Sequence record: OZ196285.1
DNA: 64,000 nucleotides
Direction: 5' to 3' (one strand)
Of the stretch, positions 10,193 through 61,448 are shown in pieces (the first letter of the stretch is position 1; each line of letters begins with the position of its first letter). The position numbers and the translations under genes are program-made. Under the pieces are notes generated by a model. That model was not told the DNA's origin. It made no database searches and saw only the letters and a list, made by a program, of their open reading frames with translations.

Positions 10193-10212
10193 ACGTGAAT
10201 TGTTGTCTGTTC

Positions 10213-10218
10213 TAAATA
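10213..10218 (+). promoter_or_regulatory. T4-like late promoter (TAAATA)
   Basis: Same hexamer precedes tail-fibre genes and endolysin in this window. Confidence 0.6.
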
Positions 10219-10249: not shown

Positions 10250-10807
10250 ATGCCAATGCAATCATCGGGTGCAATCTCGCTTGACGACATCCAAAATTAT
10301 TTTGGCGGTGAGCCATCTATAGGCATCACTGAGTATTATCGCGGCGGTGCATATGTACCTGACATTACAGAAAACGCAGGTATTCCTACTAGCGGTCTAA
10401 TCGACATGAATGACTTTTACGGTTCAATGCGTCTGACTGCGGTGAATACTAGTCGCGATACAACTATCTCAACAACTGCATCACGTTCGACTGGTTACAG
10501 TTCAACATGGAGCACTGGTTACACTTCATCATGGGGTACGGCTCGCGGTACTTCGCGTGGGACAAGCCGCACCACTTCTTGGACAACGACGTGGTCAACA
10601 GAGACCACATGTAGTAAAGGTGGGTGTGGTAGTCGAAACACTTCGCGCACCACTTCACGCGGTACGAGTTACACGACTTCATGGACGACTTCATGGACGA
10701 CTTCACGCAGCACTTCGCGAAATACGTCTCGTGCAACTACGCGCGATACCACATACTCATACGATACGACATACACGACATCGTGGGATACACAAACACC
10801 GGAATAA
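10250..10807 (+). CDS. Ser/Thr-repeat protein with phage adhesin/fibre-tip-like N-terminal domain
   Basis: N-terminal SSGAISLDDIQNYFGG...EYYRGG...IPTSG.I.MNDFYG; residues 66-183 are T-S-[RWY]-x tetrad repeats around CSKGGC. Confidence 0.8.
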   Translation: MPMQSSGAISLDDIQNYFGGEPSIGITEYYRGGAYVPDITENAGIPTSGLIDMNDFYGSMRLTAVNTSRDTTISTTASRSTGYSSTWSTGYTSSWGTARGTSRGTSRTTSWTTTWSTETTCSKGGCGSRNTSRTTSRGTSYTTSWTTSWTTSRSTSRNTSRATTRDTTYSYDTTYTTSWDTQTPE

Positions 10808-10809
10808 TC

Positions 10810-11031
10810 ATGACAGAACAGCGAATAGAACATCTTGAAAATGAAGTCAAACGTATGAGCGCCGAATTGTCGCGTGCAAACGACATCATTAAAAACTTGA
10901 ATGAAAGTCAGACTCTATTAATGGAGACGATCATTGAACACATCGCGTCACTTGAAGCTGAACGAGATCAGCTTCTTCGGAGTTATGACGATGGTATGAA
11001 GTCAATAATTAACAAATACAAAAACGAATAA
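10810..11031 (+). CDS. small coiled-coil protein
   Basis: Heptad pattern; ATG 10810 after upstream TAA. Confidence 0.65.
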   Translation: MTEQRIEHLENEVKRMSAELSRANDIIKNLNESQTLLMETIIEHIASLEAERDQLLRSYDDGMKSIINKYKNE

Positions 11032-11038
11032 GGGACGA

Positions 11039-11899
11039 TTGCACGTGAACAATAACAACTTTCGTAGTGAAATGACGGGCTTTAATAATGCATGTCGAAT
11101 TGGTAAGTTAGTGTTGAACGATACGCGACCCTTTGAATTGTGCATGAAAGCTATTGACGAACTGCAACACAACGGCATTGATTGTCAATTTGACATGTCA
11201 CATGATGATGGTGGTGATGTATCTGCGGCAGAGTGGGTATCTCAGTTGCGTTCATTTTGTATTCGATATCTAAACATCGATGTTCAATGTCGTGCATTGA
11301 TTGCATCGTTCTACGACAACAAATCTGACCTTGATATTAATTTCTCAAGCAACTCAGTTGACAAGTACAAACTGAGTTCACTTGCTCCTTGTTTCGAGCA
11401 TTACAAGCGCGTTGTATTTCTTGGTGGCACTAATATCTTACACGACCAGATGGATCTCGATAAGATTGAGTACATCATGAATGCAGACTCAAGTGTCGTC
11501 ATTAAGCCACACCCACTAACTAACGTCAGTGACATGAAAATGTTGAGTGAGCGATTTGGGAGTGAGCGAGTGCTGTCGAACAAGATCAATGGTGTTCAAT
11601 TGCTTTCACAGTGCGAACACGCGTGGGTGCCATCTAGTTCTGAAATGTGGTTCACGTGTGTTATGAATAACATTGATTTTGATATCATCACGCGTGATGC
11701 CGTTGCGCGTCGTGGGCTGTATTACCCGATGATCAATGCAATGAATGTGATTCATGCCGACACTGGTATTGACAAAAAGACAATCGCGTCCAAGATTATC
11801 ACGTCTCCATCATCGGGGATATACACATCTTACCATTCATTCAAATACTGTCATGCGAATTTTATCGAAAACGTTCGCATGTGTGGTGGTGACATATGA
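11039..11899 (+). CDS. KpsS/KpsC-like (capsule-synthesis family) glycosyltransferase-like protein
   Basis: VVIKPHPL motif followed by LLSQCEHAWVPSSSE, matching the GT-B HP...vNS pattern. Confidence 0.55.
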   Translation: MHVNNNNFRSEMTGFNNACRIGKLVLNDTRPFELCMKAIDELQHNGIDCQFDMSHDDGGDVSAAEWVSQLRSFCIRYLNIDVQCRALIASFYDNKSDLDINFSSNSVDKYKLSSLAPCFEHYKRVVFLGGTNILHDQMDLDKIEYIMNADSSVVIKPHPLTNVSDMKMLSERFGSERVLSNKINGVQLLSQCEHAWVPSSSEMWFTCVMNNIDFDIITRDAVARRGLYYPMINAMNVIHADTGIDKKTIASKIITSPSSGIYTSYHSFKYCHANFIENVRMCGGDI

Positions 11900-12543
11900 T
11901 TAACATAGACATACATACGTACATCTACAGTGTTCATGATTTAGACCAATTGCGGGTGCTCAGTAAGTCGTTTGAACTTACTCACCCTGACAACGATGGT
12001 GGTGTAATTTGCATAGTAGCCGATGAAATAGAAGTGTCGTCGTTGCCTGAAATTCAGAACGTTCGATATACGAAAACATACCCTACGGGTCGGTACATAT
12101 TCTTTTCCGTTGAACAGTTCTTCATGAACAAGTTGTATTCTCTAGTCGCAAGAACAAAAGACACTTGCGGGTTGTTGTCGTATTATCATGATGATGAGAA
12201 GAATGACTTTCGCATCGTCAACGACATTGAGGCTGATCTACCACACGAGTTCAGTAATGTGAATTTCACAATCGAGCCGCACGCAGATCGTCTAATGTAT
12301 TACAAGATTCTGAAGCACATGCGTGATGTTGTGACGTTGAATACTCGCAAGTTTAATCCTAGCGATACGTCTCAAATCAACAGCATATACACGCTTACGT
12401 TTCCGTGGGAAATGTATTTCAATGTTTTGCGACAATGCGACGGGGTTTCTGAATCGTTTAAATCCGATGTAGTGTTTAACTGTAAGCGGTTTTCACATAG
12501 TATATGGTACAGATACAGCAATATTCTGAACATAGGTGAGTAA
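11896..12543 (+). CDS. hypothetical protein in modification operon
   Basis: 215-aa ORF, ATGA overlap. Confidence 0.75.
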   Translation: MINIDIHTYIYSVHDLDQLRVLSKSFELTHPDNDGGVICIVADEIEVSSLPEIQNVRYTKTYPTGRYIFFSVEQFFMNKLYSLVARTKDTCGLLSYYHDDEKNDFRIVNDIEADLPHEFSNVNFTIEPHADRLMYYKILKHMRDVVTLNTRKFNPSDTSQINSIYTLTFPWEMYFNVLRQCDGVSESFKSDVVFNCKRFSHSIWYRYSNILNIGE

Positions 12544-12545
12544 TT

Positions 12546-13247
12546 ATGAAACAGATACACGAAGTGGCATTGGTGTCTGGACTTGATAGCATTGTTCTTT
12601 ATGAAATGTTGTCGAAAAATAACCCAAACATATTGCCCGTTTATTTCAAGTGGGGGTTTGATATTGACGATGCAGAAATTGCCAAGCTCCCTGAAGGGAC
12701 AGTCATTCATGAAATCCCCGAATACTTAAAATTCGATGTTGATATCGGTTCGCGTGAGTGTGTCAATCTTGATGGGCGTGACACGATTATGATGAACATG
12801 ATCATGCACATTTATAAGCCAAGTGTGATTTACAAAGGCACGATACTGAACGATGAATCATATGTCGAGTCGAATTTCATGTTCACTCAAAAGATCGCTC
12901 ATACATGGAGTTTAATCAACCGCAAAACGACGGAGATTAAGCACCCGTTCCAAACAAAAAGTAAGCGCGATGTGATTATGCTTGCTGAGGCGATGGACAT
13001 CAACCCATTAGATTTTCAATATTGCTACAATGAATCGGGTAATTGTGGGTATTGTAACAAGTGTCGGATGACGCGCCTATTGAGTATGTACACGTCGAAT
13101 CCAGATATCGATTTCTTGAATAAATTCAAGGCTGAGTGCGAAGACGAAACAGTTCGTCTCACCGGTAATTACATAACACAGACCGATGATGTCGTCGGTG
13201 AAATAACTCGACAAATTGAGGGAAAATATGAACATACAATATCATAG
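12546..13247 (+). CDS. QueC-like PP-loop ATP pyrophosphatase
   Basis: VSGLDS PP-loop, HPF...SKRDVI, CY...CGYCNKC zinc motif. Confidence 0.75.
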   Translation: MKQIHEVALVSGLDSIVLYEMLSKNNPNILPVYFKWGFDIDDAEIAKLPEGTVIHEIPEYLKFDVDIGSRECVNLDGRDTIMMNMIMHIYKPSVIYKGTILNDESYVESNFMFTQKIAHTWSLINRKTTEIKHPFQTKSKRDVIMLAEAMDINPLDFQYCYNESGNCGYCNKCRMTRLLSMYTSNPDIDFLNKFKAECEDETVRLTGNYITQTDDVVGEITRQIEGKYEHTIS

Positions 13248-13905
13248 CATCGGCGGGCGACACTTAATTGTGATCGATGATGCATTCACATCCGATGAAT
13301 TGAAGTTCATCACAGATACAGTAGACGCGATATCAGAGTCTTTGTGGCAAGAAGGTCACGATGACAACTTGTTGCGGTATAGTGGCATTCACGAACTGAA
13401 CGTAATAAACGGGACCGACGATCCGAACAGTGTCATCAAAGGCGACTGTGTGTTTCTCAACGCTCTAGGTGCTCCTCACAAAAAGATTTGCTCTATTGTA
13501 GACAATGTGGTGTATAGCGCGTTCTCAACTAAAAGCATCGTCACGTCCGAAGATCGTGAGCGCATCTTCTTTGACAAGAACGAGTTTTTTTGCCGAGTTT
13601 TACGTTATATGCCGGGATATTACGACCAATGTGCAGATGACGATTTGTTCTTGCATACTGACATTTCAACTGGCGTGATGTTCACCCCATTCGAAAACAC
13701 AATCGATCATCAATGCACGTATTATTACGAAGATGATAAATTCGAAACTCCCGTGCTTACACTTGAACATAAACCCGGTCGGTTGGTTGTGTTTGATGGT
13801 CGTATTGTTCACGCACCTAATCGATGTGACAACTCGACTCGTTACGCGATGTCGATGCACAACGATCACGATTTGCAAAAATATCTAGGTGCATTTAGTG
13901 AGTGA
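13228..13905 (+). CDS. 2OG-Fe(II) oxygenase
   Basis: HTD...KPGRLVVFDG.IVH...TRY facial triad and 2OG Arg. Confidence 0.8.
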   Translation: MNIQYHSIGGRHLIVIDDAFTSDELKFITDTVDAISESLWQEGHDDNLLRYSGIHELNVINGTDDPNSVIKGDCVFLNALGAPHKKICSIVDNVVYSAFSTKSIVTSEDRERIFFDKNEFFCRVLRYMPGYYDQCADDDLFLHTDISTGVMFTPFENTIDHQCTYYYEDDKFETPVLTLEHKPGRLVVFDGRIVHAPNRCDNSTRYAMSMHNDHDLQKYLGAFSE

Positions 13906-14797
13906 TTTAATATCGGATACTGCCGATAATATGATTCACGTGTATGATGATGAACTATCGGCAGCTCAGTGGTACTTCGGCAGTAGAACTTGCGATTTCT
14001 ACTTATACGGTATTAAAGAATTACGTGCTTCTCTATCGCAGTACCCGTTCATAGATGTTCAGTCACGCTCGGATGGTGATTTGATACGAGTGGGTGAGCC
14101 TGCAATTACGATTACAATTCGTCGTGCTAGTGTATTGAAGTATGGGAATATGATCGAAACGTTGTTGTATAATACCGTATGGTATCGTTCGACAGTCGGT
14201 ACTATTTTGATAGGCATGAAAGACACGTTGATTCGTAATGGGTTTAGTGTGTATTCAGCATTCCCTCAGACAGGTCGCGCTAGTGTGAATCATGAGCAAA
14301 CGCTGGTTGCAAATGAAATGTTCGAGCGTGTGTTTTATAAACTCGGTACAGAACTACGTTCTGTTGCAACACACAATGAAATATTGATGACATCTGAGCG
14401 CTTTTGTTTGCAGAATTATCGAAGTGTGATGGCAGATACTTATGATATTGCGAACTTTTGCGAACTGTGTCATGAACTCGATTATACTGGCAACATCATG
14501 ATTGATTCATCGCCTATAATTGAAAACATCGATTACGTATTATCTCACACGAACAACACGATTAGTCAAGTTGAATCGATTACTATCAACGAGTGGCATG
14601 AACTAGTCGAACATTATAGTGGGAATAAACGTCTGACGTTCGGCATAGGAAGTTGTTGTTTCACTAACATTTCGCGTGATACATTTGGGCTTGTCTTCAA
14701 AACATGCGCAATTGAACGCAATGGAAAATGGATCGGTGTGAGTAAACAGACATCAAATAAAAAAACACACAATGGTTATGTGGGTAAGTTATCATGA
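13889..14797 (+). CDS. divergent nicotinate/nicotinamide phosphoribosyltransferase-fold protein
   Basis: TGRAS, THNE, ADTYD, FGIGS, ISRDTFGLVFK align to NadV motifs DFGARG, EHS, MDSYD, FGMGG, DRDTQRFAMK. Confidence 0.65.
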   Translation: MHLVSDLISDTADNMIHVYDDELSAAQWYFGSRTCDFYLYGIKELRASLSQYPFIDVQSRSDGDLIRVGEPAITITIRRASVLKYGNMIETLLYNTVWYRSTVGTILIGMKDTLIRNGFSVYSAFPQTGRASVNHEQTLVANEMFERVFYKLGTELRSVATHNEILMTSERFCLQNYRSVMADTYDIANFCELCHELDYTGNIMIDSSPIIENIDYVLSHTNNTISQVESITINEWHELVEHYSGNKRLTFGIGSCCFTNISRDTFGLVFKTCAIERNGKWIGVSKQTSNKKTHNGYVGKLS

Positions 14798-15798
14798 GAA
14801 AATATTGCATTGCGCCTTTTGCATCACCTGCGATTACGCCAGATGGATTTAAGGTATGTTCATATCCCGGTCAGAAAGTATATGACGACATTTCATTCTG
14901 GAATAGTGAAGAGATAATGGAAATGCGTCGAACGATTCGTGAGGGCGGTACACCTGAATCTTGTATTGAATGTCGCAAAGGGCGAGACGGGTTGGTATGC
15001 TCGGCAAATCCAGATGACGTTCGCGATGAATACGTCCCGTTGAATTTTAAAAACTTGTTTATTGCACGCAGTAATAAGTGCGATATGGCATGTGAAATGT
15101 GTTCTTCTACAATATCACACACGTACGACAAGGTGCATGGTGATGGGAGCGTGGGTGTAATCGAGAACAATATCGATTTGACCCCCTATCTCCACGAGAC
15201 AACACACGCAGCAATCAGCGGCGGTAACCCTGTGCTTGATAATAAGCTTCTTGATATCATCGACGGATTAGACGCTGACCGTCTGCGCTCTATGTTCTTC
15301 ACTAGCAACGGAAGTGTATTCCCTAAGTCATTCATTGATTCGATCAAGCGTCTATCAAAGACTGATATCAGCTTGATATTTTCAATTGATGGGCCCAAAT
15401 ACGTAAATGAAGTCGTGAGGGAAAGGAGTCGTCAGCAACGATTCTACGATACATTTCAACGCGTGATGCAGGATGTCATCGAACACGAAAATATATTCAT
15501 GTGTATTGAGTTCACCGCAACAAACAAGACGGTATCGCATCTTTCTGATTTGTATGACGAAATGATGTTTATGCTATCGACGGATGAATTGTCGAGAGTG
15601 AAATTCATTTTCAACGTGTGTAGCTCGCCAGTACATCTTTCTGCAATGCATCTTACGGCAGAGCAAGAAAACTCAATCACGAAGCAATTGTCGTATTTTG
15701 AGCATGTACTCAGAACCGCGCCGACTGAATTGGCTAGTGTGATGCATAGTAGACTGTACGATTTTGCAGAACGTTACAACGAGCAGCGAATACTATAG
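14794..15798 (+). CDS. radical SAM protein with N-terminal SPASM/twitch-like Cys cluster
   Basis: CDMACEMC, SGGNP, FFTSNGS, FSIDG; N-terminal YCIAPF...CS...CIEC. Confidence 0.9.
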   Translation: MRKYCIAPFASPAITPDGFKVCSYPGQKVYDDISFWNSEEIMEMRRTIREGGTPESCIECRKGRDGLVCSANPDDVRDEYVPLNFKNLFIARSNKCDMACEMCSSTISHTYDKVHGDGSVGVIENNIDLTPYLHETTHAAISGGNPVLDNKLLDIIDGLDADRLRSMFFTSNGSVFPKSFIDSIKRLSKTDISLIFSIDGPKYVNEVVRERSRQQRFYDTFQRVMQDVIEHENIFMCIEFTATNKTVSHLSDLYDEMMFMLSTDELSRVKFIFNVCSSPVHLSAMHLTAEQENSITKQLSYFEHVLRTAPTELASVMHSRLYDFAERYNEQRIL

Positions 15799-16884
15799 AA
15801 TAATAGTTCGTTCGACCATAGAGGCGAGCAAAGGTGACACTGTTTTCAGTTCATCGATGTTTGCCTTTTTTATTGTCTCGTGGCAAAACTCTACCCACTT
15901 GACGTGTTCATATCTTGAATTTCGTTGTATTCCGACTAATTCATTATAGGCGCGGCGAGTTGTCATGTTGTTTTGCAACGCCTCGTACTTTTCAACCATT
16001 GCGTTTATGAATTCGGGTGGTGCATTAAACAGAGACATGCGCTCAGGCATAACAATAAATCCAACCCCGAGTTCAATATCATCGTGTAATTCTGAAAGCT
16101 CATCAAATCGTTCGATGTTGTACATGGTCATTGTTGACAATAATGACACATCAATATGTGTGGATAGATTCTTCGAATCGTTTATGAATGTGTTCAAACG
16201 ATCATAGTTTATAAACTTTCTCTGAAAGTTGTTTACTGATTCCACCCCGTCGATTGAAATTACTAGTCGAACATGTTTGCCGCTGAAGTGGAGCTGCATT
16301 AGTCGTGTGAATATACACGACCCGTCACGCATCTTGCTAGTATTGCCGTTTGTTACTATGGTGATTTCTTCGGCTCGGCTTCTGTCAAGCGCGTCAAAGA
16401 TTTCAACCCCTCTTTCCATGTCTTGGATATTCCCGCCTAATATGCGAATCGATTCTACGTTGGTGGATTGTTCGATTGCAAACAAACACTCATCTACGTT
16501 GTCGATTTTATTCGTCGTCTTGCTATACGTGCGTGAATATGCTCGGCTGAACTCATCACCGCACATAATACAAGCACCTGAGCACTCATTAGATGGGTAT
16601 AAAATCAAATCGCGCACTTCAGATATCTTCATTTCTAGTTTAGCTTCAACGTTTCGTTGAAATTGAATGTGCATGTTTGTAGCGATACACGATTGGCACG
16701 CTTGGGGTAATGATTTGACATCGTGGTCGACCATTGATTGTCGAACTTGAGTGATTGTGTCGTGGTTAAGCGCGTCGTGTATGTTGTCAGCTTCATATCG
16801 TATGTATGACATGCAGCATGAGCTATAAGACTGAGCAGCGATACCGAAGTCAGTGAATGGCGCAGAGCAAAGTGGTTTATTCAT
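15793..16884 (-). CDS. radical SAM protein with N-terminal SPASM/twitch-like Cys cluster
   Basis: CSGACIMC, LGGN, TNGN, ISIDG; LCSAPF...CCM...CQSC. Confidence 0.88.
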   Translation of the reverse strand: MNKPLCSAPFTDFGIAAQSYSSCCMSYIRYEADNIHDALNHDTITQVRQSMVDHDVKSLPQACQSCIATNMHIQFQRNVEAKLEMKISEVRDLILYPSNECSGACIMCGDEFSRAYSRTYSKTTNKIDNVDECLFAIEQSTNVESIRILGGNIQDMERGVEIFDALDRSRAEEITIVTNGNTSKMRDGSCIFTRLMQLHFSGKHVRLVISIDGVESVNNFQRKFINYDRLNTFINDSKNLSTHIDVSLLSTMTMYNIERFDELSELHDDIELGVGFIVMPERMSLFNAPPEFINAMVEKYEALQNNMTTRRAYNELVGIQRNSRYEHVKWVEFCHETIKKANIDELKTVSPLLASMVERTIIL

Positions 16885-16926
16885 TATGTTTAATCTCAAT
16901 CTATGTTCGTCTATAATTATTGTGAG

Positions 16927-16932
16927 TATTTA
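16927..16932 (-). promoter_or_regulatory. late promoter TAAATA for minus-strand radical SAM
   Basis: TATTTA on + strand in 44-bp divergent gap. Confidence 0.55.
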
Positions 16933-16943
16933 GGAGTAAAAAA

Positions 16944-17882
16944 ATGAACAAATTAATATCATTCAATCGAGTAGACTCGTCATATGACTATCTAGTCGAG
17001 AACAATCTAGCGAATGTTCCAACTGTGATGCAATCTCTGTACAACATGATGACTACACTAGAAATTCCCGTTCAGTACAACGCGTCTGTGTCTAACAGTC
17101 AGAACTTGCTAGTGGGCGTTTGCTTTATGCAGCATTCGTACGAGAATGATCGCGAACACTTCAACCGGGTGATTGACAATATCGCTCTCACTCGGCGCGT
17201 ATTGTTAGTTTTCAATTCATGGCAAGTTCGACAATCAATCGAATGGTTTAGGAGAGTGCGACATGAGCTAGACAAACGCACTGAGCGCGTTCTTAGTAGG
17301 TTGTTTGATGCAAGCGAAGCATTTGTACCCGTGTACTTCAATCACGATGTGAGTGCGATAGAGAGCGCGTATGGGTATAGAGTGTTGCCGTACAATCCGT
17401 GTACATTCATTGATTCTTCGTCATACGGGACAATGACGACACACAAAGACCGAAAGGTTGTGTATGGCGAACTAGATTTGAATTTGGCATCAGCATTTAC
17501 AAGCAGATTTGATATCCCAACCGACGAATTTGTTATGTTCAATTTTCGCAACGTGATTGATGAGCGCGATCTTGTTGAGAATCACTACTCGCGGTCGTGG
17601 TTTGTATTGATGCCAAGTCACATAGGTGATACAGCAGGGATGGGGTTCTGGCGTTCCAAAGTACAGCACGCGATTAACGTTGGATCTATCATCATCACGG
17701 ATGAGCATGAGGCGAAACATCTAGGTGAATCGTTCGCGTATACGTACTCTCAACTTGTAACTAAGAGCGACGACGAGCTACAACGCATCGCAGAGGAGCA
17801 AAGATTAGAGTTCGAACATAATCTCTCACGAAGGGCTGCATTGACACAATTCAAACTTACTATAAAGAGTATCGAGTTATGA
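16944..17882 (+). CDS. putative GT-B glycosyltransferase-like protein
   Basis: C-terminal YSRSWFVLMP...WRSKVQHAINVGSIIITD resembles GT-B donor-binding segment; weak. Confidence 0.4.
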   Translation: MNKLISFNRVDSSYDYLVENNLANVPTVMQSLYNMMTTLEIPVQYNASVSNSQNLLVGVCFMQHSYENDREHFNRVIDNIALTRRVLLVFNSWQVRQSIEWFRRVRHELDKRTERVLSRLFDASEAFVPVYFNHDVSAIESAYGYRVLPYNPCTFIDSSSYGTMTTHKDRKVVYGELDLNLASAFTSRFDIPTDEFVMFNFRNVIDERDLVENHYSRSWFVLMPSHIGDTAGMGFWRSKVQHAINVGSIIITDEHEAKHLGESFAYTYSQLVTKSDDELQRIAEEQRLEFEHNLSRRAALTQFKLTIKSIEL

Positions 17883-19204
17883 GAACTGTATTGGCTATTC
17901 CGATGGCTGGGCGTGGTGAACGTATGGGTGATATTTCCCGTGTCGTACCTAAAGGGTTGATCAACTATCACAATCACACATTTTTATATCACATTTATCA
18001 ATATTACGATGGTCAATTTGACGAGTGTGTGGTTACTGTAGCTTCAGAGTTCAAGGATATGCTGACGCAGTATGCACATAACTTTGGACTAGAATTGACG
18101 ATAGTCATTGACGATTCGTACAATGGAAATTCGGTGATTCTTGAAAGCATCGACGCTGACACTGTGATATTGAATTGGTGTGACGTTGTGCCAGTTGATG
18201 TTGATGTTCGGAATTTGAGTGACGGGGTGACGGTATTTACGAAGAGCGGCACTGGTCGGTATGTATATGACGGGAGCGTTGTTGAAACTGCGGTTGACGC
18301 GGGTGATTTCTGTGGGATATATGCGCTGCACAACACGCCCGAGTATAATCTTGTGTGGGGTGATTTCGTCGATGTCATGCAGGCAAACTCATTTGATGTG
18401 TCATTGCGTGCATGTGATGTTGTCGATTTGGGGTCTGCTGATAAACTCGCCCGCACTCAAGAGTCGCTACCGACATGTCGTTACTTCAACGAGATTGAGT
18501 TTGATGATGACACAGTGACAAAACGAGCGTCTGGCGAAGAAGGGACGTTTAAGATACGGCAAGAGATATCGACGCTACTCGAAAGACGTGTTGGGTACGT
18601 CGAGTTATTAGAACACGATGAGAGTTCGTACACGATGCGTCGCGTTGATGGTAGAATCCCACGTCAAATCAATGCTCCTATGATTAACGAGGGTGATGAT
18701 GTGTGTGTTGAGTCGATCCGACGTGAGATCACACATCGAATTCTGAGCAGAATGCGTGACATTGAATGTTATGTCGGTATTAATTCTGAAGATTTGGTGA
18801 GCGGGGTCAAACGAATTGAAGAGTTTGTCATTGAAAACACGACAAAATTCTACGATATTCACGGGGATTTGGTGTGTGATAACGCGATTGAAACTATCGA
18901 CGGTGACATTGTTTTAATCGACCCTCGTGGATTTTTCGGTCATTCGAAGCGCGGGCCAATCGAATACGACACAAGCAAATTCTTGTATAGTGTCAACGGG
19001 TACTATAAATTCAATTATGACGTTTTGTATGATGGTAATCACGCTCGTTATGACAATCACAGCGACATGTCACTGTTGGAAGAAGCATGGGTTGCGACAC
19101 ACTGGTTGGCGTTGGCTGGCTTTTTTAAGAATAACCCAGCCAAAGCAATCGGTGCGTATCATATCGGGATGTGTAAGATGAATCGTGTTATAGAAAAGCT
19201 GTAG
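17879..19204 (+). CDS. nucleotidyltransferase fused to APH/choline-kinase-like domain
   Basis: IPMAGRGERMG...PKGL N-terminus; HGDL..DN...IDPRG...YDTSK C-terminus. Confidence 0.85.
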   Translation: MRTVLAIPMAGRGERMGDISRVVPKGLINYHNHTFLYHIYQYYDGQFDECVVTVASEFKDMLTQYAHNFGLELTIVIDDSYNGNSVILESIDADTVILNWCDVVPVDVDVRNLSDGVTVFTKSGTGRYVYDGSVVETAVDAGDFCGIYALHNTPEYNLVWGDFVDVMQANSFDVSLRACDVVDLGSADKLARTQESLPTCRYFNEIEFDDDTVTKRASGEEGTFKIRQEISTLLERRVGYVELLEHDESSYTMRRVDGRIPRQINAPMINEGDDVCVESIRREITHRILSRMRDIECYVGINSEDLVSGVKRIEEFVIENTTKFYDIHGDLVCDNAIETIDGDIVLIDPRGFFGHSKRGPIEYDTSKFLYSVNGYYKFNYDVLYDGNHARYDNHSDMSLLEEAWVATHWLALAGFFKNNPAKAIGAYHIGMCKMNRVIEKL

Positions 19205-19751
19205 CGTGAGCAAGTGCCGATGATTGATTGTTGTGCCTGTCTACGTGCAAGCAGCATATCTCGGGGAAGTTCGTTTTGATATCATTTATGTTCTCGATTC
19301 GGTCGTCGATGAAGAATTCAATATCATGTCGTTTCTGTAGATCTTTTATGTACACTGACTTGTTTTCATGGAATTCGATACTGATCAGCTCGTCTATCAT
19401 GTGCGGGAACAATGCACTTAGATTGAATTGTCTATTGCACCATGCAGTTCGACTCCACCCGAACTTGGTAAGCGCGATTATCTTGTGCGTCTTTGAAAGT
19501 CGCTCTAATGTCGAGTACGCGTCTTCGTATGCAGGCATATACTTTGCACTGTCGTGTTCAGTGTATGCAGCTATGAGCTTTCTTGTTTCGTCTGTTGATG
19601 TGTTCTTAAACATTTCGTGTGCGTGTATGTCAGTGTTGATCAGTGAAAGGTCGTTGAGCTTGTGTTGGAGACCAAGCTGAGTCATGAAGAATGGGAGATT
19701 AGATTTCCAGTTCAGAAGTACGCCATCCACATCAATTATAAGGGTTTTCAT
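19188..19751 (-). CDS. HAD-family phosphatase, 5'(3')-deoxyribonucleotidase-like
   Basis: IDVDGVLLNW, LTK, FIDDRIEN. Confidence 0.85.
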   Translation of the reverse strand: MKTLIIDVDGVLLNWKSNLPFFMTQLGLQHKLNDLSLINTDIHAHEMFKNTSTDETRKLIAAYTEHDSAKYMPAYEDAYSTLERLSKTHKIIALTKFGWSRTAWCNRQFNLSALFPHMIDELISIEFHENKSVYIKDLQKRHDIEFFIDDRIENINDIKTNFPEICCLHVDRHNNQSSALAHATAFL

Positions 19752-19788
19752 TATAAATACTCATAGGGTTTTAAAGTGAGTATTTATA
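19752..19788. promoter_or_regulatory. inverted repeat with TATAAATA late promoters on both strands
   Basis: TATAAATACTCA 19752-19763 / TGAGTATTTATA 19777-19788. Confidence 0.7.
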
Positions 19789-19936
19789 GCATTCGAAAAA
19801 TAAATGAAAAAAATGTTAGAATTCTATTGACAGCCCTTCTAAAAAATGTAATTATGTACACATCAGCTCAACACTGAAACGAAAAACAAAAACTTAACGA
19901 TAACAAACAATCAATCATCAAAAAAGGAAACATCCT

Positions 19937-20128
19937 ATGAAAACTCTAAAAACTATCGCACTAACAGCTATCCTTTCAATCGCTTCTGTATCTGCTTTCG
20001 CAGGTGGTACAATGGGCGGAAACCCTGGCTTCGAAATGTGTAAAATCGGCGCAATCAAATGTGGCGTACCAATGAAAGCAGAGACGAAAGAATCTACTGA
20101 CGTTGTTGAAGTTAAAACTGAAAAATAA
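19937..20128 (+). CDS. small secreted protein (signal peptide, two Cys)
   Basis: MKTLKTIALTAILSIASVSAFA/GG; upstream TTGACA 19827; own terminator. Confidence 0.75.
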   Translation: MKTLKTIALTAILSIASVSAFAGGTMGGNPGFEMCKIGAIKCGVPMKAETKESTDVVEVKTEK

Positions 20129-20146
20129 TCATTAACGTGATTACCG

Positions 20147-20178
20147 AAGCAACGTTCAAATCGAACGTTGCTTTTTTT
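20147..20178 (+). terminator. Rho-independent terminator
   Basis: AAGCAACGTTC/GAACGTTGCTT followed by T run. Confidence 0.85.
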
Positions 20179-20250: not shown

Positions 20251-21807
20251 ATGCAAACATCTAAAAACGTAATTACCGAATCTCTTGAAAACGCATTTAA
20301 CGTACAAGACATTTTCGGCGCACCTAGTAACATCGTAACAGCAGTAGATAGCTATAAAGTATCGCACTGGCTACAATTTCCCAAGAAGCTTGAGATCAGC
20401 CAGTATTACGTCGAGTCACGCGGTGGCAAATTCGACAAAATCATGATTGACGGAATCGCGTACATGTGTCGCATTCTTGAACGTGGCGTTCGTAAAGGCG
20501 ATGTGAAATACGCGAAACGTCTATTCAAAAAGCACTTTGGTTCTGAAGTGTTCAATGAAGAAGGGTTTAACATCATCGTGGATGAACTTGACGGCAAGCT
20601 ACCGATTAAAGTTCGTGCAGTAAAAGAGGGCACAGTCGTGCCAGTTAAAAACCCCATTCTGACAATTGAGAACACAGATAAACGATTCGGCTGGCTACCT
20701 GGCTACCTTGAAACGTTCATCTTGCGTGCTATTTGGTATCCGACAACAGTGGCAACAATCTCTTTTGAAGTTAAGAAAATCATTCGCAGTTTCATGAAAA
20801 AGACTGTTGATGAAGAACTTATTCCTCAATTAGAGCCTTTCAAACTTCACGATTTCGGTGCACGTGGTGTATCAAGTGGCGAGTCAGCAGCAGTTGGTGG
20901 CGCAGCACACTTGAAAAACTTCTTAGGCACAGATACTGTCGAAGCTTTGGTTGCCGTAGAAGCAATCTATGGTGAAGATCTTGAAGACTTCATCGCGGGA
21001 TTCTCGATTCCCGCACGTGAGCACTCAACAACTACAATCTACAAAGAAATGGGCGAAGACCTAGCGTTCTTGAACTCGATTGAAAACTGGGGTGGCGGTC
21101 TATACGCATGTGTAATGGATTCATACGATTACGATGCGGCAATGGAACGTGTATCAACAGGTCGTTTCAAAGAACTGATTATCAGCAAAGGCGGTACTTT
21201 CATCGCTCGACCTGATAGTGGCGTACCAGTAGATGTTGTAATGCGCGGTCTTGAAATTCTTGGCAAGAATGTTGGTTACACTATCAACAGTAAAGGCTAC
21301 AAAGTCTTGCACCCTAGCTACAGAATCATTCAAGGTGACGGTGTGAATATCGAAGAGATTCGACGCATTCTAGACTTCATGGAATCGAAGGGCTGGTCTG
21401 CCGAGAACATTGCATTCGGTATGGGTGGTGGCTTGCTACAACAATCTGACCGTGATACTCAACGTTTCGCGATGAAGATGTCGGCTGCTATCGTTGCAGG
21501 TGAATATGTTCCGGTGTTCAAGATGCCGAAAACAGACATCAGCAAAGCATCAAAATCTGGTTTCTTGGATCTAATCGCAGTTAAACCTGACGAAGAAAAT
21601 CCGGCTGCTCGTGGCTACGTGACTGTCTCTACTGAAAATTACGAGAATCGCGTACACCCTCAGAGTGTTATGGAAACTGTGTTCGAAGATGGCGTGACTG
21701 TGGCTAAGTTTAGCCTTGCAGCAGCACGCGAACTTTCAGACAAACAAGCAAACTTCATGAACGAAAGTGAGTGGAAAGTTGCTAAAAAGGTACGCATTAC
21801 TGAATAG
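20251..21807 (+). CDS. nadV: nicotinamide phosphoribosyltransferase
   Basis: DSYKVSH, LHDFGARG, IPAREHS, RPDSG, IIQGDG, FGMGGGLLQ. Confidence 0.95.
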   Translation: MQTSKNVITESLENAFNVQDIFGAPSNIVTAVDSYKVSHWLQFPKKLEISQYYVESRGGKFDKIMIDGIAYMCRILERGVRKGDVKYAKRLFKKHFGSEVFNEEGFNIIVDELDGKLPIKVRAVKEGTVVPVKNPILTIENTDKRFGWLPGYLETFILRAIWYPTTVATISFEVKKIIRSFMKKTVDEELIPQLEPFKLHDFGARGVSSGESAAVGGAAHLKNFLGTDTVEALVAVEAIYGEDLEDFIAGFSIPAREHSTTTIYKEMGEDLAFLNSIENWGGGLYACVMDSYDYDAAMERVSTGRFKELIISKGGTFIARPDSGVPVDVVMRGLEILGKNVGYTINSKGYKVLHPSYRIIQGDGVNIEEIRRILDFMESKGWSAENIAFGMGGGLLQQSDRDTQRFAMKMSAAIVAGEYVPVFKMPKTDISKASKSGFLDLIAVKPDEENPAARGYVTVSTENYENRVHPQSVMETVFEDGVTVAKFSLAAARELSDKQANFMNESEWKVAKKVRITE

Positions 21808-25748: not shown

Positions 25749-25777
25749 AAAAAAGCAGCCAATTGGCTGCTTTTTTT
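25749..25777. terminator. bidirectional terminator
   Basis: A6-GCAGCC-AATT-GGCTGC-T7 between convergent genes. Confidence 0.85.
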
Positions 25778-26831
25778 AGTTCACCATCTTAATGGCGATT
25801 TTGTTGTCCATGTATGACATTTTCTGTTCGAACTCAACATCATATTCAGGTCGGTGCTCGTATTCGACCGAAAGCATTTCTTTCAGACATCGATACAATT
25901 CAGACTTGTAATACCCCTCTGGCATTGTCTGCATTTGCTTGTACTGCGCTTGCATTGCTTCTTTGATGATCTGAGGGTCCATGAACTTGATCGACATTTC
26001 TCGCGGTGCCTTTACAGTACCGAAGTCAACGAATACTTGCGCTTTCTCTGCAACTTGAATGAAGTCATAGATCGTATCATAGCTCATGCGCGATAGCGTG
26101 TGGTGCATACACAAGTGTTTGCTGTGCTCTTTAAGTAGCGGCACGTTAGCTAACATCAAGTCATGGTCGATGTTCTGACGAATGTATTCGTTACGTTCTT
26201 TACCACCGTCACAAGAGATTGTGAACACGATACGATGCTTGTATTCTTTGCAGATTGCTAGAATTTTCTTAGCAAGTGGCGTATGCAATACAGTGCCGTT
26301 CGTCAGAATGAACACTTCAGCTTTAGTATCTTCAAGCACTTCTTTCAGTACGTCGATGGTGCGCTTGTCCATAAAGGGTTCACCTCCATACAAAACAACA
26401 GTCTCGACGCCTTTCGGTATGCTGAAATCAAGCTGCTTGTAATCGTACGTATCTTCAATGTCATACAAGTCCATGTACGTCTTGCTGTTCTTGCCGTAAC
26501 ACATACGACATGCAAGGTTACATTTGTTTGACATTAGAATTTGAATCGTGCGCGGGTGTTCTTCTAGTGCTTCATACTCAAAGTATTTCTGATCAGACAG
26601 TTCACCGTAGCTCATACACTCTTTGCAGTATTCTGGTAAAGTGTCGTATTCGAACATCTTCTCGCGATGTTCATTGATGATGTCTGACGACCACCAATCT
26701 TCAACATTTGGGAATGGCTCAGAAAGCTGAGAACAGCAGATGTGATACCCGTCTGGCTTCGCATCGCGTGTGTTGAATGGAGAGCCGCAAAGCGGCTTCT
26801 TGCCATCTTTAAATCCAAATTTATCAATCAT
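25776..26831 (-). CDS. radical SAM protein with N-terminal SPASM/twitch-like cluster
   Basis: CNLACRMC, YGGEPF, LTNGT, ISCDG; LCGSPF...ICCS...CKEC. Confidence 0.92.
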   Translation of the reverse strand: MIDKFGFKDGKKPLCGSPFNTRDAKPDGYHICCSQLSEPFPNVEDWWSSDIINEHREKMFEYDTLPEYCKECMSYGELSDQKYFEYEALEEHPRTIQILMSNKCNLACRMCYGKNSKTYMDLYDIEDTYDYKQLDFSIPKGVETVVLYGGEPFMDKRTIDVLKEVLEDTKAEVFILTNGTVLHTPLAKKILAICKEYKHRIVFTISCDGGKERNEYIRQNIDHDLMLANVPLLKEHSKHLCMHHTLSRMSYDTIYDFIQVAEKAQVFVDFGTVKAPREMSIKFMDPQIIKEAMQAQYKQMQTMPEGYYKSELYRCLKEMLSVEYEHRPEYDVEFEQKMSYMDNKIAIKMVN

Positions 26832-27103
26832 TATTTGAACTCGTCTAGTAAATTCTGAAACTCACTGTCGCGTTCTGCATCAATCGAACCAGTCATCAGC
26901 GTCTCTAGTGCTGACATCGACATGATTGGTGGGACAACAGGTCTAAGATCTTCTAGAATGAAAATGATTGATTCCATTGGAAGATCATTCTCCACGATCT
27001 CTGGTGGTAGTGTGTGCTTGTATACGCAACCATCACCCCAATCGATAACGACTGCGTGTTCCCATTTGTCTATTTCAATAATTTTAAAGTTAGGCTTTTC
27101 CAT
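26831..27103 (-). CDS. small acidic hypothetical protein
   Basis: Coupled to both neighbours. Confidence 0.7.
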   Translation of the reverse strand: MEKPNFKIIEIDKWEHAVVIDWGDGCVYKHTLPPEIVENDLPMESIIFILEDLRPVVPPIMSMSALETLMTGSIDAERDSEFQNLLDEFK

Positions 27104-47418: not shown

Positions 47419-47488
47419 GTTTTTAATCTCATTTGTGCATTTACATGTATTTAGCAGACATAAAAAAAGCCCCGACGGGGCTTTTTAG

Positions 47489-50410: not shown

Positions 50411-50446
50411 ATATGTTTTCCCAATAAGTTATGTATAATGAGTTAT

Positions 50447-53575: not shown

Positions 53576-53586
53576 TGTTTACCGCC

Positions 53587-61270: not shown

Positions 61271-61359
61271 TGGCGGAAGCACTGGGAGTCGAACCCAGAG
61301 AACGCTATTAACGTCCGACACCTTAGCAGGGTGCTGTCATACCATTAGACCATGCTTCC
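61271..61359 (-). tRNA. trnS: tRNA-Ser(GCT)
   Basis: Cloverleaf, CT-GCT-AA loop, long variable arm, G73, CCA. Confidence 0.95.
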
Positions 61360-61365
61360 GTAATG

Positions 61366-61442: not shown

Positions 61443-61448
61443 GATGTT

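What the first reader, a model, noticed from the sequence alone, without database searches (positions are those of the whole stretch)
10250..19751. Late operon pairing the Ser/Thr protein with a large tailoring-enzyme set: candidate phage protein-modification (RiPP-like or glycosylation) system
Seen: gene-dense, overlapping run: S/T protein, coiled coil, KpsS-like GT, unknown, QueC-like ATPase, 2OG-Fe(II) oxygenase, NAMPT-fold PRTase, two SPASM-type radical SAMs, GT-B-like, nucleotidyltransferase-kinase, HAD, with late promoters at 10213, 16927 and 19781. Established: nucleotidyltransferase plus kinase plus GT make and transfer NDP-activated sugars or phospho-moieties; SPASM radical SAMs and 2OG oxygenases often tailor peptides or sugars. 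Inference: the phage builds an unusual activated donor and decorates the Ser/Thr array or other virion protein, for receptor tropism or evasion. Late timing argues against pure DNA hypermodification. I do not know a described system with this composition.
Basis: partly seen in the sequence, partly recalled or inferred. Interest (0 to 1): 0.85.

Follow-up and report, generated by a model that had tools for sequence, protein, structure and literature searches.

The report
Phage fibre-protein modification cassette
A Vibrio phage gene cluster pairs a Ser/Thr-rich repeat protein with a Kdo/sialyl-transferase-like enzyme and a radical SAM enzyme; this trio recurs beside tail-fibre genes in many unrelated marine phages and probably decorates a virion fibre protein, which has not been described for phages of Gram-negative bacteria.

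Summary
The window is Vibrio phage F86, a KVP40-like member of Straboviridae. The gene run at 10250-19751 is real. It is not one late operon, because two genes lie on the minus strand and the "late promoter" motifs occur no more often than chance.

The core claim holds. The Ser/Thr protein is functionally paired with the "KPHP" transferase.
- The transferase's partial model best matches beta-Kdo transferases, and it carries their K-x-H-P CMP-binding motif.
- In 75 of 80 environmental viral loci that encode a relative, the gene just upstream encodes a protein with at least 35% Ser+Thr (150-1547 aa). After dereplication this is 8 of 9 lineages.
- The pair usually sits at the end of a tail-fibre block.
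- rSAM1 belongs to the same module. All 9 non-KVP40 loci with an rSAM1 relative show the order S/T protein, rSAM1, transferase.
- In one relative the QueC-like gene is fused to rSAM1.

The rSAMs are of the N-terminal-twitch type, not clear SPASM RiPP maturases. The QueC-like, PRT-like and HAD genes are confined to KVP40-like phages.

Most likely function: post-translational decoration of a fibre-associated repeat protein, by O-linked ulosonic-acid-type glycosylation plus radical chemistry. The chemistry is unproven. No description was found in the literature searched.

The parts
10212..10218 (+). CTAAATA, a late-promoter-like heptamer 32 nt upstream of the S/T gene
   Evidence: There are 7 matches in the window against 7.25 expected, so on its own it is not evidence of late timing.
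10250..10807 (+). Ser/Thr-repeat protein of 185 aa. It has a conserved N-terminal domain of about 60 aa and a 125-aa tail of (S/T)3-bulky tetrapeptide repeats.
   Evidence: The tail is 55% S+T. Autocorrelation of R/K/W/Y/F/H is 0.72, 0.67 and 0.49 at lags 4, 8 and 12. Orthologues exist in 35 KVP40-like phages. The N-terminal domain is shared with small proteins encoded just downstream of tail-fibre genes in Xanthomonas phages. The F86 record does not annotate it as one CDS.
10810..11031 (+). Small coiled-coil protein of 73 aa
   Evidence: Only coiled-coil-type weak Pfam hits. It is conserved between the S/T gene and the transferase in all KVP40-like loci and in L096.
11039..11899 (+). K-x-H-P transferase-like protein. 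It has a GT-B-like C-terminal half and resembles CMP-ulosonic-acid (Kdo/sialic acid) transferases. The annotated start is 11072.
   Evidence: The AF2 model has mean pLDDT 66, with residues 120-286 good. Top Foldseek PDB hits are the WbbB beta-Kdo transferase at 5e-5 to 2e-4; KrkA and the WaaA CMP-Kdo domain appear lower in the list. Column shares over 94 family members: D52 94, K156 94, H158 94, P159 94, N132 94, G260 94, K109 93, G130 93, E202 91. The only GT families hit among members are weak matches to PF05159, PF07922 and PF07388.
11896..12543 (+). Conserved protein of 215 aa, function unknown. It always follows the transferase in KVP40-like phages.
   Evidence: There is no Pfam, NCBIfam or PDB match. 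The AF2 model is unusable, with pLDDT 34.
12546..13247 (+). QueC-family PP-loop ATPase. It keeps the P-loop and a four-Cys cluster.
   Evidence: PF06508 at 3e-7. The profile's best solved relative is Cap9 (9nto_B) at 3e-5, ahead of QueC (2pg3) at 0.07. Invariant S11, G12, D14, S15 and C160, C167, C170, C173. It is fused to rSAM1 in contigs L096 and L097.
13216..13905 (+). Probable 2OG-Fe(II) oxygenase. The annotated start is 13228. It is an accessory gene.
   Evidence: Weak hits to PhyH (0.008) and the FlmC family (6e-5) on the C-terminal 50 aa only. It is present in 6E35.1a, D479 and L096 but absent from the KVP40 cluster.
13889..14797 (+). Short NAMPT/NAPRTase-fold phosphoribosyltransferase-like protein. 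The annotated start is 13931.
   Evidence: PF04095 at 1e-6. The profile hits NAMPT structures at 4e-10. hhalign against the phage's own NadV gives 94% probability. The His at the NadV E-H-S position and the G-I-G-S ... R-D-T ... K block are aligned and invariant in the family.
14794..15798 (+). rSAM1, a radical SAM enzyme with an N-terminal Cys-rich twitch-type domain
   Evidence: NF033640 at 8e-27. The nearest solved relative is CteB (5wgg) at 9e-7. In 9 of 9 non-KVP40 viral loci it lies between an S/T-rich ORF and the K-x-H-P transferase.
15793..16899 (-). rSAM2, a paralogue of rSAM1 (23% identity), on the minus strand
   Evidence: The record's start (window 16812) cuts off the N-terminal Cys motif that matches NF033640 from residue 8. 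It is present in KVP40, QD01 and 6E35.1a. No rSAM2 orthologue was found in the stretches held of D479, L009 and L096.
16944..17882 (+). Accessory protein of 312 aa, function unknown.
   Evidence: No match in Pfam, NCBIfam, PHROGs or PDB. It is found only together with the nucleotidyltransferase-kinase, in F86, 6E35.1a and L096.
17879..19204 (+). Bifunctional nucleotidyltransferase (N-terminal) and small-molecule kinase (C-terminal). It is an accessory gene.
   Evidence: NTP_transf_3 at 2e-5 and fructosamine kinase at 0.008. eIF2B-gamma NT fold at 5e-3 and MTR-kinase-like 2pyw at 0.85. Invariant G11, G13 and K25, and H328, D330, N335 and D348.
19188..19751 (-). HAD-type phosphatase-like protein, a paralogue of T4 30.2, on the minus strand. 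A TATAAATA motif faces it at 19781-19788.
   Evidence: phrog_420 at 1e-35 and the deoxyribonucleotidase phrog at 7e-4. KVP40.0262 is annotated as 30.2 with PF00702. It is conserved at the end of the cluster in all KVP40-like loci. Motif.

Best explanation
The core is a phage-specific cassette for post-translational modification of a protein.

Substrate. It is a protein whose tail is built of tetrapeptide repeats: three Ser/Thr followed by one bulky residue (Arg, Trp, Tyr, Phe or Lys). It is probably attached to, or part of, the tail-fibre apparatus.

Transferase. A roughly 300-aa GT-B-like enzyme with the K-x-H-P CMP-binding signature of Kdo and sialic-acid transferases. It most likely takes a CMP-activated ulosonic acid from the host pool (CMP-Kdo or a nonulosonic acid), or another donor that releases CMP. 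It would transfer the group to the many Ser/Thr hydroxyls. This step is inferred.

rSAM1. An N-terminal-twitch radical SAM enzyme that acts in the same pathway, either on the repeat protein or on the attached group. This is inferred from strict adjacency.

KVP40-like extension. In F86 the cassette has been extended with:
- a QueC-family ATP-dependent amide-forming enzyme, physically fused to rSAM1 in one relative;
- a PRPP-type phosphoribosyltransferase-like protein plus a HAD phosphatase, the same logic as PRPP-dependent ribosylation followed by dephosphorylation in capsule synthesis;
- a second rSAM.

F86-subgroup extension. F86 and its closest relatives add a 2OG oxygenase, and a kinase/nucleotidyltransferase with an unknown partner protein. 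These would activate and add a further substituent.

Shown: gene content, folds, motifs and co-occurrence. Inferred: the donor, the acceptor residues, the order of steps and virion location.
For: 1. Transferase identity.
- Foldseek top hits are the WbbB beta-Kdo transferase.
- K156, H158 and P159 are present in 94 of 94 family members, and S/T201 with E202 in more than 90 of 94.
- The K/R-x-H-P His and a Ser pair bind the CMP phosphate in KrkA, and the paper describes K/R-x-H-P as a named motif of these Kdo transferases (PMC12887879).
- The only GT Pfam families hit by members are Capsule_synth, GT52 and polysialyltransferase.
- The L027-type lineage also encodes a GT29-like sialyltransferase nearby, above the Pfam cut-off.

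2. Pairing with S/T proteins.
- 75 of 80 viral loci have an ORF with at least 35% S+T ending 140-570 nt upstream on the same strand. The background mean is 15%.
- After dereplication at 60% identity, 8 of 9 clusters show this.
- The same pairing is seen in Caulobacter phages Lullwater and Cr30 and in T4-like contigs L006 and L008.

3. rSAM1 link.
- The order S/T protein, rSAM1, transferase is seen in 9 of 9 non-KVP40 loci and in the Tara contigs.

4. QueC link.
- A 558-aa QueC::rSAM1 fusion occurs in an otherwise collinear cluster.

5. Fibre context.
- Tail-fibre proteins lie directly upstream in L027 (phrog_892, 4e-59) and L098 (phrog_30742, 2.5e-44).
- The same holds for Lullwater gp40 and the baseplate genes of L006.
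- The N-terminal domain of the F86 protein recurs after tail-fibre genes in Xanthomonas phages.

6. Cluster persistence.
- The cluster stays together despite rearrangement in D479 and L009, where rSAM1 has moved upstream.

7. PRT-like protein.
- It keeps the aligned His and the PRPP block of NadV.
- Kdo transferase, PRPP-ribosyltransferase and HAD phosphatase are combined in KrkA.
Against: - No direct evidence exists that the S/T protein is in virions or is modified. No proteomic data were found.
- The transferase lacks a conserved Q-x-x-x-D nucleophile where retaining Kdo transferases have it. An invariant G-x-N sits there instead. The N-terminal 119 residues of the model are unreliable. Sequence matches to KpsC and PF05159 are not significant.
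- In KVP40-like phages the cluster is not next to tail-fibre genes. It lies beside nadV and nrd genes.
- QueC-like, PRT-like, HAD and the 215-aa protein occur only in the KVP40-like lineage. Their linkage could therefore reflect inherited synteny.
- All known NAMPT-family enzymes ribosylate pyridine bases, not glycans or proteins (own knowledge).
- The strict period-4 repeat looks more like an ordered beta structure than a mucin-like glycosylation region.
Confidence: 0.5

Rival explanations
1. RiPP-like radical chemistry is the main event. The radical SAM enzymes cross-link or otherwise tailor the bulky residue of each tetrapeptide repeat, or its Ser/Thr neighbours, giving a rigid covalently stapled fibre. 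The transferase-like protein adds only a minor decoration or acts as a scaffold.
For: - The strict period-4 placement of R/W/Y/F/K is what repeat-motif peptide maturases act on.
- rSAM1 lies between the substrate gene and the transferase in 9 of 9 loci.
- Unrelated rSAM/SPASM genes also sit beside the pair in the L006-type and L085-type lineages.
- The nearest solved relative of rSAM1 is the peptide thioether synthase CteB, at 9e-7.
Against: - Most lineages with the S/T-transferase pair have no radical SAM gene within 5-6 kb. The transferase, not the rSAM, is therefore the universal partner.
- rSAM1 falls in the N-terminal twitch family NF033640. All matches to named peptide maturases are far below their cut-offs.
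- No leader-peptide or RRE-like element was seen.
- The substrates reach 1547 aa, far beyond RiPP precursors.
Confidence: 0.2
2. There are two unrelated functions side by side. The S/T protein, coiled-coil protein and transferase form the fibre module. QueC-like, PRT-like, HAD, the rSAMs and the oxygenase make a free nucleobase or nucleoside-type metabolite. This could be a nicotinamide- or 7-deazapurine-like compound for NAD metabolism, counter-defence, or tRNA or DNA modification. These genes would be only syntenic with the fibre module.
For: - The QueC family, a PRPP-type PRT and a HAD phosphatase together follow the logic of base-to-nucleoside pathways.
- The cluster abuts nadV, and the PRT-like protein is a NadV paralogue.
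- The nearest solved relative of the QueC-like protein, Cap9, handles 7-deazaguanine.
- These genes are absent from every non-KVP40 lineage that has the S/T-transferase pair.
Against: - rSAM1 is tied to the S/T-transferase pair in an independent lineage, and QueC is fused to rSAM1. The two halves are therefore bridged.
- The set stays contiguous with the S/T gene after rearrangement in D479 and L009.
- No transglycosylase was annotated in the parts of the KVP40 and F86 records read.
- The one gene annotated as QueE-like matches QueE models only over about 30 N-terminal residues.
Confidence: 0.2
3. No enzymatic modification takes place. The S/T-repeat protein is an ordinary beta-structured fibre or adhesin subunit, and the K-x-H-P protein is a non-catalytic assembly chaperone that descends from a glycosyltransferase.
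For: - Tail-fibre genes are often followed by dedicated chaperones (own knowledge).
- The transferase-like gene always follows the fibre-like gene.
- The N-terminal half of the model is disordered.
Against: - The residues that bind the donor in characterised relatives are invariant across 94 members that share only about 20% identity. This argues for retained catalysis.
- Other sugar-handling or radical enzymes co-occur repeatedly.
Confidence: 0.07

Closest known systems
Virion O-glycosylation in mycobacteriophages (Freeman et al. 2023, PMC10527164, reference seen)
   Same: Phage-encoded glycosyltransferases are thought to decorate Ser/Thr-rich parts of virion proteins.
   Different: What Freeman et al. 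found is recalled from my own knowledge, not read here: actinobacteriophages, capsid and tail-tube C-terminal extensions, and GT-A/GT-B enzymes using hexose donors. In F86 there is a separate repeat protein beside tail-fibre genes, a K-x-H-P CMP-type transferase, a partner radical SAM, and hosts that are Gram-negative marine and freshwater bacteria.
Retaining beta-Kdo transferases WbbB (GT99), KpsC/KpsS (GT107) and KrkA (GT140)
   Same: Best structural match. They share the K/R-x-H-P motif and a Ser(Thr) position that bind the CMP phosphate.
   Different: The phage family has no conserved Q-x-x-x-D nucleophile. It is about 300 aa with a divergent N-terminal half. The presumed acceptor is a protein, not a glycan. 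No significant sequence match was found.
KrkA/Bcs3-type polysaccharide ribosyltransferases (PRPP-dependent phosphoribosyltransferase plus HAD phosphatase, fused to a Kdo transferase in KrkA)
   Same: The same three activities are present as neighbours: a Kdo-transferase-like protein, a PRPP-type transferase and a HAD phosphatase.
   Different: The phage PRT has the NAMPT (type II) fold, not the Bcs3-type module. The proteins are separate. The analogy is of logic only.
Cap9 and QatC, QueC-family enzymes that conjugate a 7-deazaguanine to a protein N-terminus (10.1101/2025.04.06.647259; PMC13279940; PMC13329287)
   Same: Cap9 is the nearest solved relative of the QueC-like protein (3e-5). The P-loop and Cys cluster are retained. 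It is a precedent for a QueC fold acting on a protein.
   Different: Those are bacterial defence components with a TGT-like or QatB partner. Here the partner is a radical SAM enzyme (fused in one relative), and no 7-deazaguanine supply genes were identified.
Flagellin O-glycosylation with nonulosonic acids (Maf/FlmG systems; own knowledge)
   Same: CMP-activated nine-carbon acids are added to many Ser/Thr of a filament protein in the cytoplasm. The 2OG oxygenase's best NCBIfam hit is the FlmC family (weak).
   Different: The transferase family is different. No phage-encoded nonulosonic acid synthesis genes were found.
Radical SAM/SPASM RiPP maturases such as CteB
   Same: A radical SAM gene lies adjacent to a repeat-containing substrate gene. 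CteB is the nearest solved relative of rSAM1.
   Different: The auxiliary Cys domain is N-terminal. There is no leader or RRE. The substrates are whole proteins of up to 1547 aa. Scores to all named maturases are far below their cut-offs.

Membership tests
Retaining beta-Kdo glycosyltransferases (GT99/GT107/GT140) | GT-B-like double Rossmann architecture resembling WbbB, KpsC or KrkA | tested here: inconclusive
   The C-terminal Rossmann half is modelled well. WbbB gives the top Foldseek hits (5e-5), but TM-scores are only 0.3-0.4 and the N-terminal 119 aa have pLDDT below 50.
Retaining beta-Kdo glycosyltransferases (GT99/GT107/GT140) | (K/R)-x-H-P motif whose His binds the CMP phosphate | tested here: met
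   K156, H158 and P159 are present in 94 of 94 members. Motif definition from PMC12887879.
Retaining beta-Kdo glycosyltransferases (GT99/GT107/GT140) | Q-x-x-x-D motif with the Asp nucleophile, about 34 residues before the His | tested here: not met
   At that distance the family has G130 (93 of 94) and N132 (94 of 94). Positions 136 and 139 are variable. Motif definition.
Pfam PF05159 Capsule_synth (KpsC/KpsS) | Score above the family's gathering threshold | tested here: not met
   The window protein gives no hit. Only 3 of 94 relatives hit, with best E 1e-3.
QueC (7-cyano-7-deazaguanine synthase) | Score above the TIGR00364 cut-off (150 bits) | tested here: not met
   21.7 bits. The Pfam family-level hit PF06508 at 30.6 bits is above its cut-off of 22. 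It is therefore a member of the superfamily, not an equivalog.
QueC (7-cyano-7-deazaguanine synthase) | PP-loop and C-terminal four-Cys zinc motif | tested here: met
   S11, G12, D14 and S15, and C160, C167, C170 and C173, are invariant in 6 of 6. Motif description from PMC13329287.
Cap9/QatC protein-deazaguanylating enzymes | Partner TGT-like Cap10 or QatB, and a defence-island context | tested here: not met
   The neighbours are a radical SAM, a PRT-like protein and a transferase in a lytic phage genome. Only sequence similarity to Cap9 was found.
NAMPT/NAPRTase type II phosphoribosyltransferases | Pfam PF04095 above the gathering score, and conserved catalytic His and PRPP-binding block | tested here: met
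   29.2 bits against a cut-off of 20.8. The His and the G-I-G-S/R-D-T/K block are aligned with NadV and invariant. The protein is about 200 aa shorter than NadV and lacks NAMPT_N.
SPASM-type radical SAM RiPP maturases | C-terminal SPASM domain, and a score above a named maturase model's cut-off | tested here: not met
   No PF13186 hit. The best model is NF033640 (N-terminal twitch), at 94 and 112 bits against a cut-off of 170. Named maturases score 17-39 bits against cut-offs of at least 268 bits.
Phage virion glycosylation systems (mycobacteriophage type) | Glycan demonstrated on a virion protein | not testable with these tools
   This needs mass spectrometry of virions. No data were found in the literature held.

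The most novel reading that the evidence does not exclude
A widespread, phage-only pathway in which an N-terminal-twitch radical SAM enzyme and a CMP-dependent transferase together convert (S/T)3-bulky tetrapeptide repeats into a new kind of covalently modified fibre material. In KVP40-like phages this is elaborated by a QueC-family ligase working with the radical SAM enzyme, and by a NAMPT-fold transferase. Together they would install a ribosyl- or nucleobase-containing group on a protein. Such chemistry has no described counterpart in viruses.
Probability: 0.2. Interest if true: 0.9.

Novelty: new variant of a known kind. Interest (0 to 1): 0.72.

Why it matters
- Tail fibres decide which bacteria a phage can attach to. 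A phage-encoded system that chemically decorates a fibre-associated protein would be a new layer of virion surface biology for phages of Gram-negative and marine bacteria.
- The transferase family is large. It has 301 clusters at 50% identity, is not covered by Pfam, and was found only on viral contigs here. It would be a new glycosyltransferase family with a protein acceptor.
- The tetrapeptide-repeat proteins reach 1547 aa at about 50% Ser+Thr and are unannotated or mis-annotated in records.
- The QueC::radical-SAM fusion and the short NAMPT-fold enzyme point to unexplored enzymology.

Tried and rejected
- Single-sequence searches of the PDB with the transferase, the QueC-like protein and the NT-kinase gave nothing.
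- A profile of the 215-aa protein against the PDB gave nothing. Its AF2 model failed, with pLDDT 34, so no fold search was run on it.
- A profile of the 312-aa protein against the PDB gave nothing credible.
The model was built from a 6-row alignment instead.
- Scans of one genome per bacterial and archaeal species with the transferase and rSAM1 patterns found no cellular relative. This is limited to exact peptide patterns.
- DNA hypermodification was considered as the main reading and judged less likely. No transglycosylase or hydroxymethylase appeared in the parts of the records read. The gene annotated QueE-like at 36347-37216 matches QueE models only over about 30 residues.
- Late-promoter and sigma-70 or terminator scans were uninformative.
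- Literature searches for KVP40 radical SAM, phage virion glycosylation, threonine-rich tail fibre, Kdo transferase with tail fibre, and the "cell wall mannoprotein" annotation found no description of this cassette.
- The rSAM/SPASM genes of L006 and L085 are only distantly related to rSAM1 and to each other.
- The BFVD fold search returned only uncharacterised orthologues.

Full report
IDENTITY AND ANATOMY

The window is 100% identical to Vibrio phage F86 (OZ196285.1, 228 kb; window base 1 is record base 124001). F86 is a KVP40-like member of Straboviridae.

The finding's coordinates span twelve ORFs:
- S/T protein, 10250-10807
- 73-aa coiled-coil protein, 10810-11031
- "KPHP" protein, 11039-11899
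- 215-aa unknown, 11896-12543
- QueC-like, 12546-13247
- 2OG-oxygenase-like, 13216-13905
- NAMPT-fold PRT-like, 13889-14797
- rSAM1, 14794-15798
- rSAM2, 15793-16899, minus strand
- 312-aa unknown, 16944-17882
- nucleotidyltransferase-kinase, 17879-19204
- HAD, 19188-19751, minus strand

The genuine nadV gene follows at 20251-21807. The F86 record does not annotate the S/T ORF as one gene. It also starts rSAM2 too late, removing the Cys-rich N-terminus.

PROMOTERS AND THE OPERON CLAIM

- The heptamer at 10212 is CTAAATA on the plus strand.
- The motif at 16927 is the same heptamer on the minus strand, facing rSAM2.
- The motif at 19781 is TATAAATA on the minus strand, facing HAD.
- Neither motif is over-represented in the window: 7 found against 7.25 expected, and 4 against 2.2.
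- A general promoter and terminator scan was uninformative.

The run is therefore at least three transcription units, and its timing is unknown.

WHAT THE INDIVIDUAL PROTEINS ARE

The KPHP protein.
- It has no Pfam or NCBIfam match.
- An AF2 model (pLDDT 66, residues 120-286 confident) has the WbbB beta-Kdo transferase as its three best PDB matches (5e-5 to 2e-4). Other GT-B enzymes follow, including KrkA and the CMP-Kdo domain of WaaA.
- An exhaustive profile search found 301 cluster representatives, typically 270-330 aa.
- Over 94 of them the following residues are present: D52, N132, K156, H158, P159 and G260 in 94; K109 and G130 in 93; Y110 and E202 in 91; D108 in 88; Ser or Thr at position 201 in 92.
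- PMC12887879 describes a (K/R)-x-H-P motif in the retaining Kdo transferases. In KrkA its His, together with a Ser pair, binds the CMP phosphate. The same paper defines a Q-x-x-x-D nucleophile about 34 residues upstream.
- The first two features are present here. The third is not: an invariant G-x-N sits in its place.
- The only glycosyltransferase Pfam families touched by any member are Capsule_synth (3 members), GT52 and polysialyltransferase (1 each). All are weak and all are CMP-ulosonic-acid transferases.
- I read this as a new, phage-borne family that works like a CMP-dependent Kdo or sialyl transferase but is not a demonstrable member of GT99, GT107 or GT140.

The QueC-like protein.
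- It belongs to PF06508 and keeps the P-loop and four Cys.
- Its nearest solved relative is Cap9 rather than QueC.
- Cap9 and QatC attach a 7-deazaguanine to a protein. Other branches of the superfamily are N-sugar amidotransferases.

The PRT-like protein.
- It is a shortened NadV paralogue with the aligned His and PRPP block intact.

The radical SAMs.
- Both are paralogues (23% identity) of the N-terminal-twitch family NF033640.
- The nearest solved relative of rSAM1 is CteB.

The remaining proteins.
- The 441-aa protein has nucleotidyltransferase and small-molecule-kinase signatures.
- HAD is a second copy of the T4 30.2 type.
- The 215-aa and 312-aa proteins remain unknown.

Among isolated phages:
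- The S/T N-terminal domain, the KPHP protein, the QueC-like protein and rSAM1 occur in the same 35 KVP40-like Vibrio phage records.
- The KPHP protein also occurs in 9 Caulobacter phage records.
- KVP40 itself has S/T, coiled-coil, KPHP, 215-aa, QueC, PRT, rSAM1, rSAM2(-) and 30.2(-). It lacks the oxygenase, the 312-aa protein and the NT-kinase.
- 6E35.1a has the full F86 set.
- D479 and contig L009 have rSAM1 moved upstream of the S/T gene, but the set stays contiguous.

Outside this group:
- Caulobacter phage Lullwater (T7-like) has the order tail fibre, a 215-aa Thr/Ser/Tyr-rich protein, KPHP homologue.
- Cr30 (T4-like) has a Thr/Tyr-rich 116-aa protein before its homologue, in the fibre and neck block.
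- T4-like contigs L006 and L008 have a 607/637-aa S/T/W/R-rich protein and the homologue among baseplate genes, with an rSAM/SPASM gene adjacent.

A scan of IMG/VR gave 137 relatives, of which 80 loci were kept.
- In 75 of them a same-strand ORF with at least 35% Ser+Thr ends 140-570 nt upstream. These ORFs are 150-1547 aa, usually 45-55% S+T, about 10% aromatic and about 7% Arg/Lys.
- The mean over all other ORFs is 15%.
- Two of the five exceptions have no upstream sequence.
- After clustering the transferases at 60% identity, 8 of 9 clusters have such a neighbour. The ninth has a 30% S+T, 18% aromatic protein.

In the largest lineage:
- The gene upstream of the giant S/T protein is a tail-fibre protein (phrog_892, 4e-59).
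- A GT29-like sialyltransferase lies nearby.

rSAM1 AND THE QueC-LIKE PROTEIN BELONG TO THE MODULE

- Homologues of rSAM1 (42-50% identity) occur on marine contigs that are not KVP40-like. There the order is tail-fibre genes, a 119-171-aa S/T-rich protein, rSAM1-type, KPHP homologue.
- A reciprocal IMG/VR scan with the rSAM1 alignment found 9 non-KVP40 loci. All have the KPHP homologue immediately downstream. All 8 with upstream sequence have the S/T-rich ORF immediately upstream.
- One relative (contigs L096 and L097) encodes a 558-aa QueC::rSAM1 fusion inside an otherwise collinear cluster: S/T (367 aa, 55% S+T), coiled-coil, KPHP, 215-aa, fusion, oxygenase, PRT, 312-aa, NT-kinase, HAD(-).
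- rSAM1 is thus linked to the S/T-transferase pair by independent adjacency. The QueC-like protein is linked to rSAM1 by fusion.
- QueC-like, PRT-like, HAD and the 215-aa protein were not found next to the pair in any non-KVP40 lineage.
- Pattern scans of one genome per prokaryotic species found no cellular relative of either the transferase or rSAM1.

THE SUBSTRATE

- The F86 tail is not random low complexity. Bulky residues (R, K, W, Y, F, H) recur every fourth position, with autocorrelation 0.72, 0.67 and 0.49 at lags 4, 8 and 12, and negative values at all odd lags.
- The small rSAM1-associated proteins show the same pattern. The giant ones show even-lag periodicity.
- The N-terminal roughly 60 aa of the F86 protein recur at the start of small proteins encoded directly after large tail-fibre genes in Xanthomonas phages RTH11 and phiXF1, which have different C-terminal parts. 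This suggests a fibre-docking domain.

MECHANISM

Best-supported reading (confidence 0.5): a cassette that post-translationally decorates a fibre-associated repeat protein.
- The transferase would add a CMP-activated ulosonic acid, or another group released from a CMP-linked donor, to Ser/Thr. The host can supply CMP-Kdo (established knowledge for Gram-negative bacteria).
- rSAM1 acts on the protein or on the attached group.
- The KVP40-type additions resemble known glycan chemistry in logic only. The PRPP-dependent transferase plus HAD phosphatase would give net ribosylation, as in KrkA and Bcs3. The QueC-family enzyme would carry out ATP-dependent amidation or ligation.
- The kinase-nucleotidyltransferase with the 312-aa protein would activate and transfer a further substituent.

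Rivals:
- Radical cross-linking as the main modification (0.2).
- A separate nucleobase or nucleoside pathway merely adjacent to the fibre module (0.2).
- A non-catalytic chaperone (0.07).

COMPARISON AND NOVELTY

- Phage virion glycosylation is known from mycobacteriophages (PMC10527164, reference seen).
- This cassette differs in substrate type, transferase family, the radical SAM partner and host range.
- I found no description of it in the literature held.
- I rate it a new variant of a known kind, with a one-in-five chance that the chemistry is something categorically new.

Noticed in passing
window 10250-10807; also L004 about 11242-11754 (phage D479): The S/T-repeat ORF is not annotated as a gene in the F86 and D479 records. 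Only short fragments or opposite-strand ORFs are called there. In other records it is labelled "cell wall mannoprotein".
   Followed up: yes
window 25776-28109, minus strand: A second conserved trio lies 6 kb downstream: a third N-terminal-twitch radical SAM (NF033640, 4e-39), an 89-aa protein, and a 338-aa protein that KVP40 annotates with PF00534 (glycosyltransferase group 1). It may be another rSAM-plus-transferase module.
   Followed up: partly
window 15793-16899, minus strand: The record's start for rSAM2 (window 16812) removes the N-terminal Cys-rich segment. That segment aligns with the family model from residue 8 and is present in the KVP40 and 6E35.1a orthologues.
   Followed up: partly
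window 19827-20174: A small ORF (19937-20128, 63 aa) has a signal-peptide-like start. It has its own good sigma-70-like promoter (19827-19855) and a strong terminator (20146-20174), and sits between the cluster and nadV.
   Followed up: no
window 36347-37216: The gene annotated "QueE-like radical SAM" matches QueE models only over its first roughly 30 residues (47 bits or less against cut-offs of 200 or more). It gives no evidence of 7-deazaguanine synthesis.
   Followed up: partly
L096 10001-11677 and L097 4477-6153: A natural fusion of the QueC-like protein and rSAM1 (558 aa) occurs in a relative of the cluster. That contig also encodes a NADAR-domain protein just after the HAD gene.
   Followed up: partly
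alignment A11 (metagenomic relatives of the transferase): A few long members (503-553 aa) carry extra domains. One has a SET domain (1e-13) and others have class I methyltransferase domains. This hints at protein-directed modification.
   Followed up: no
L027 7487-8742, minus strand; L085 6455-7853, minus strand: In the largest marine lineage the S/T-transferase pair is flanked by a GT29-like sialyltransferase and a Caps_synth-like protein. In a 13-locus subgroup it is flanked by an rSAM/SPASM gene plus a short-chain dehydrogenase.
   Followed up: partly
L002 and L094 (KVP40 records 29201-29797 and 137172-137744): KVP40 carries two 30.2-type HAD paralogues. One is next to DNA ligase, as in T4, and one is at the end of this cluster.
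   Followed up: no
window 43606-55227, minus strand, and about 61274-63971: According to the record, the long tail-fibre genes and a tRNA array lie 24-44 kb downstream of the cluster. In F86 the S/T cassette is therefore not adjacent to the fibre genes, unlike in other lineages.
   Followed up: no
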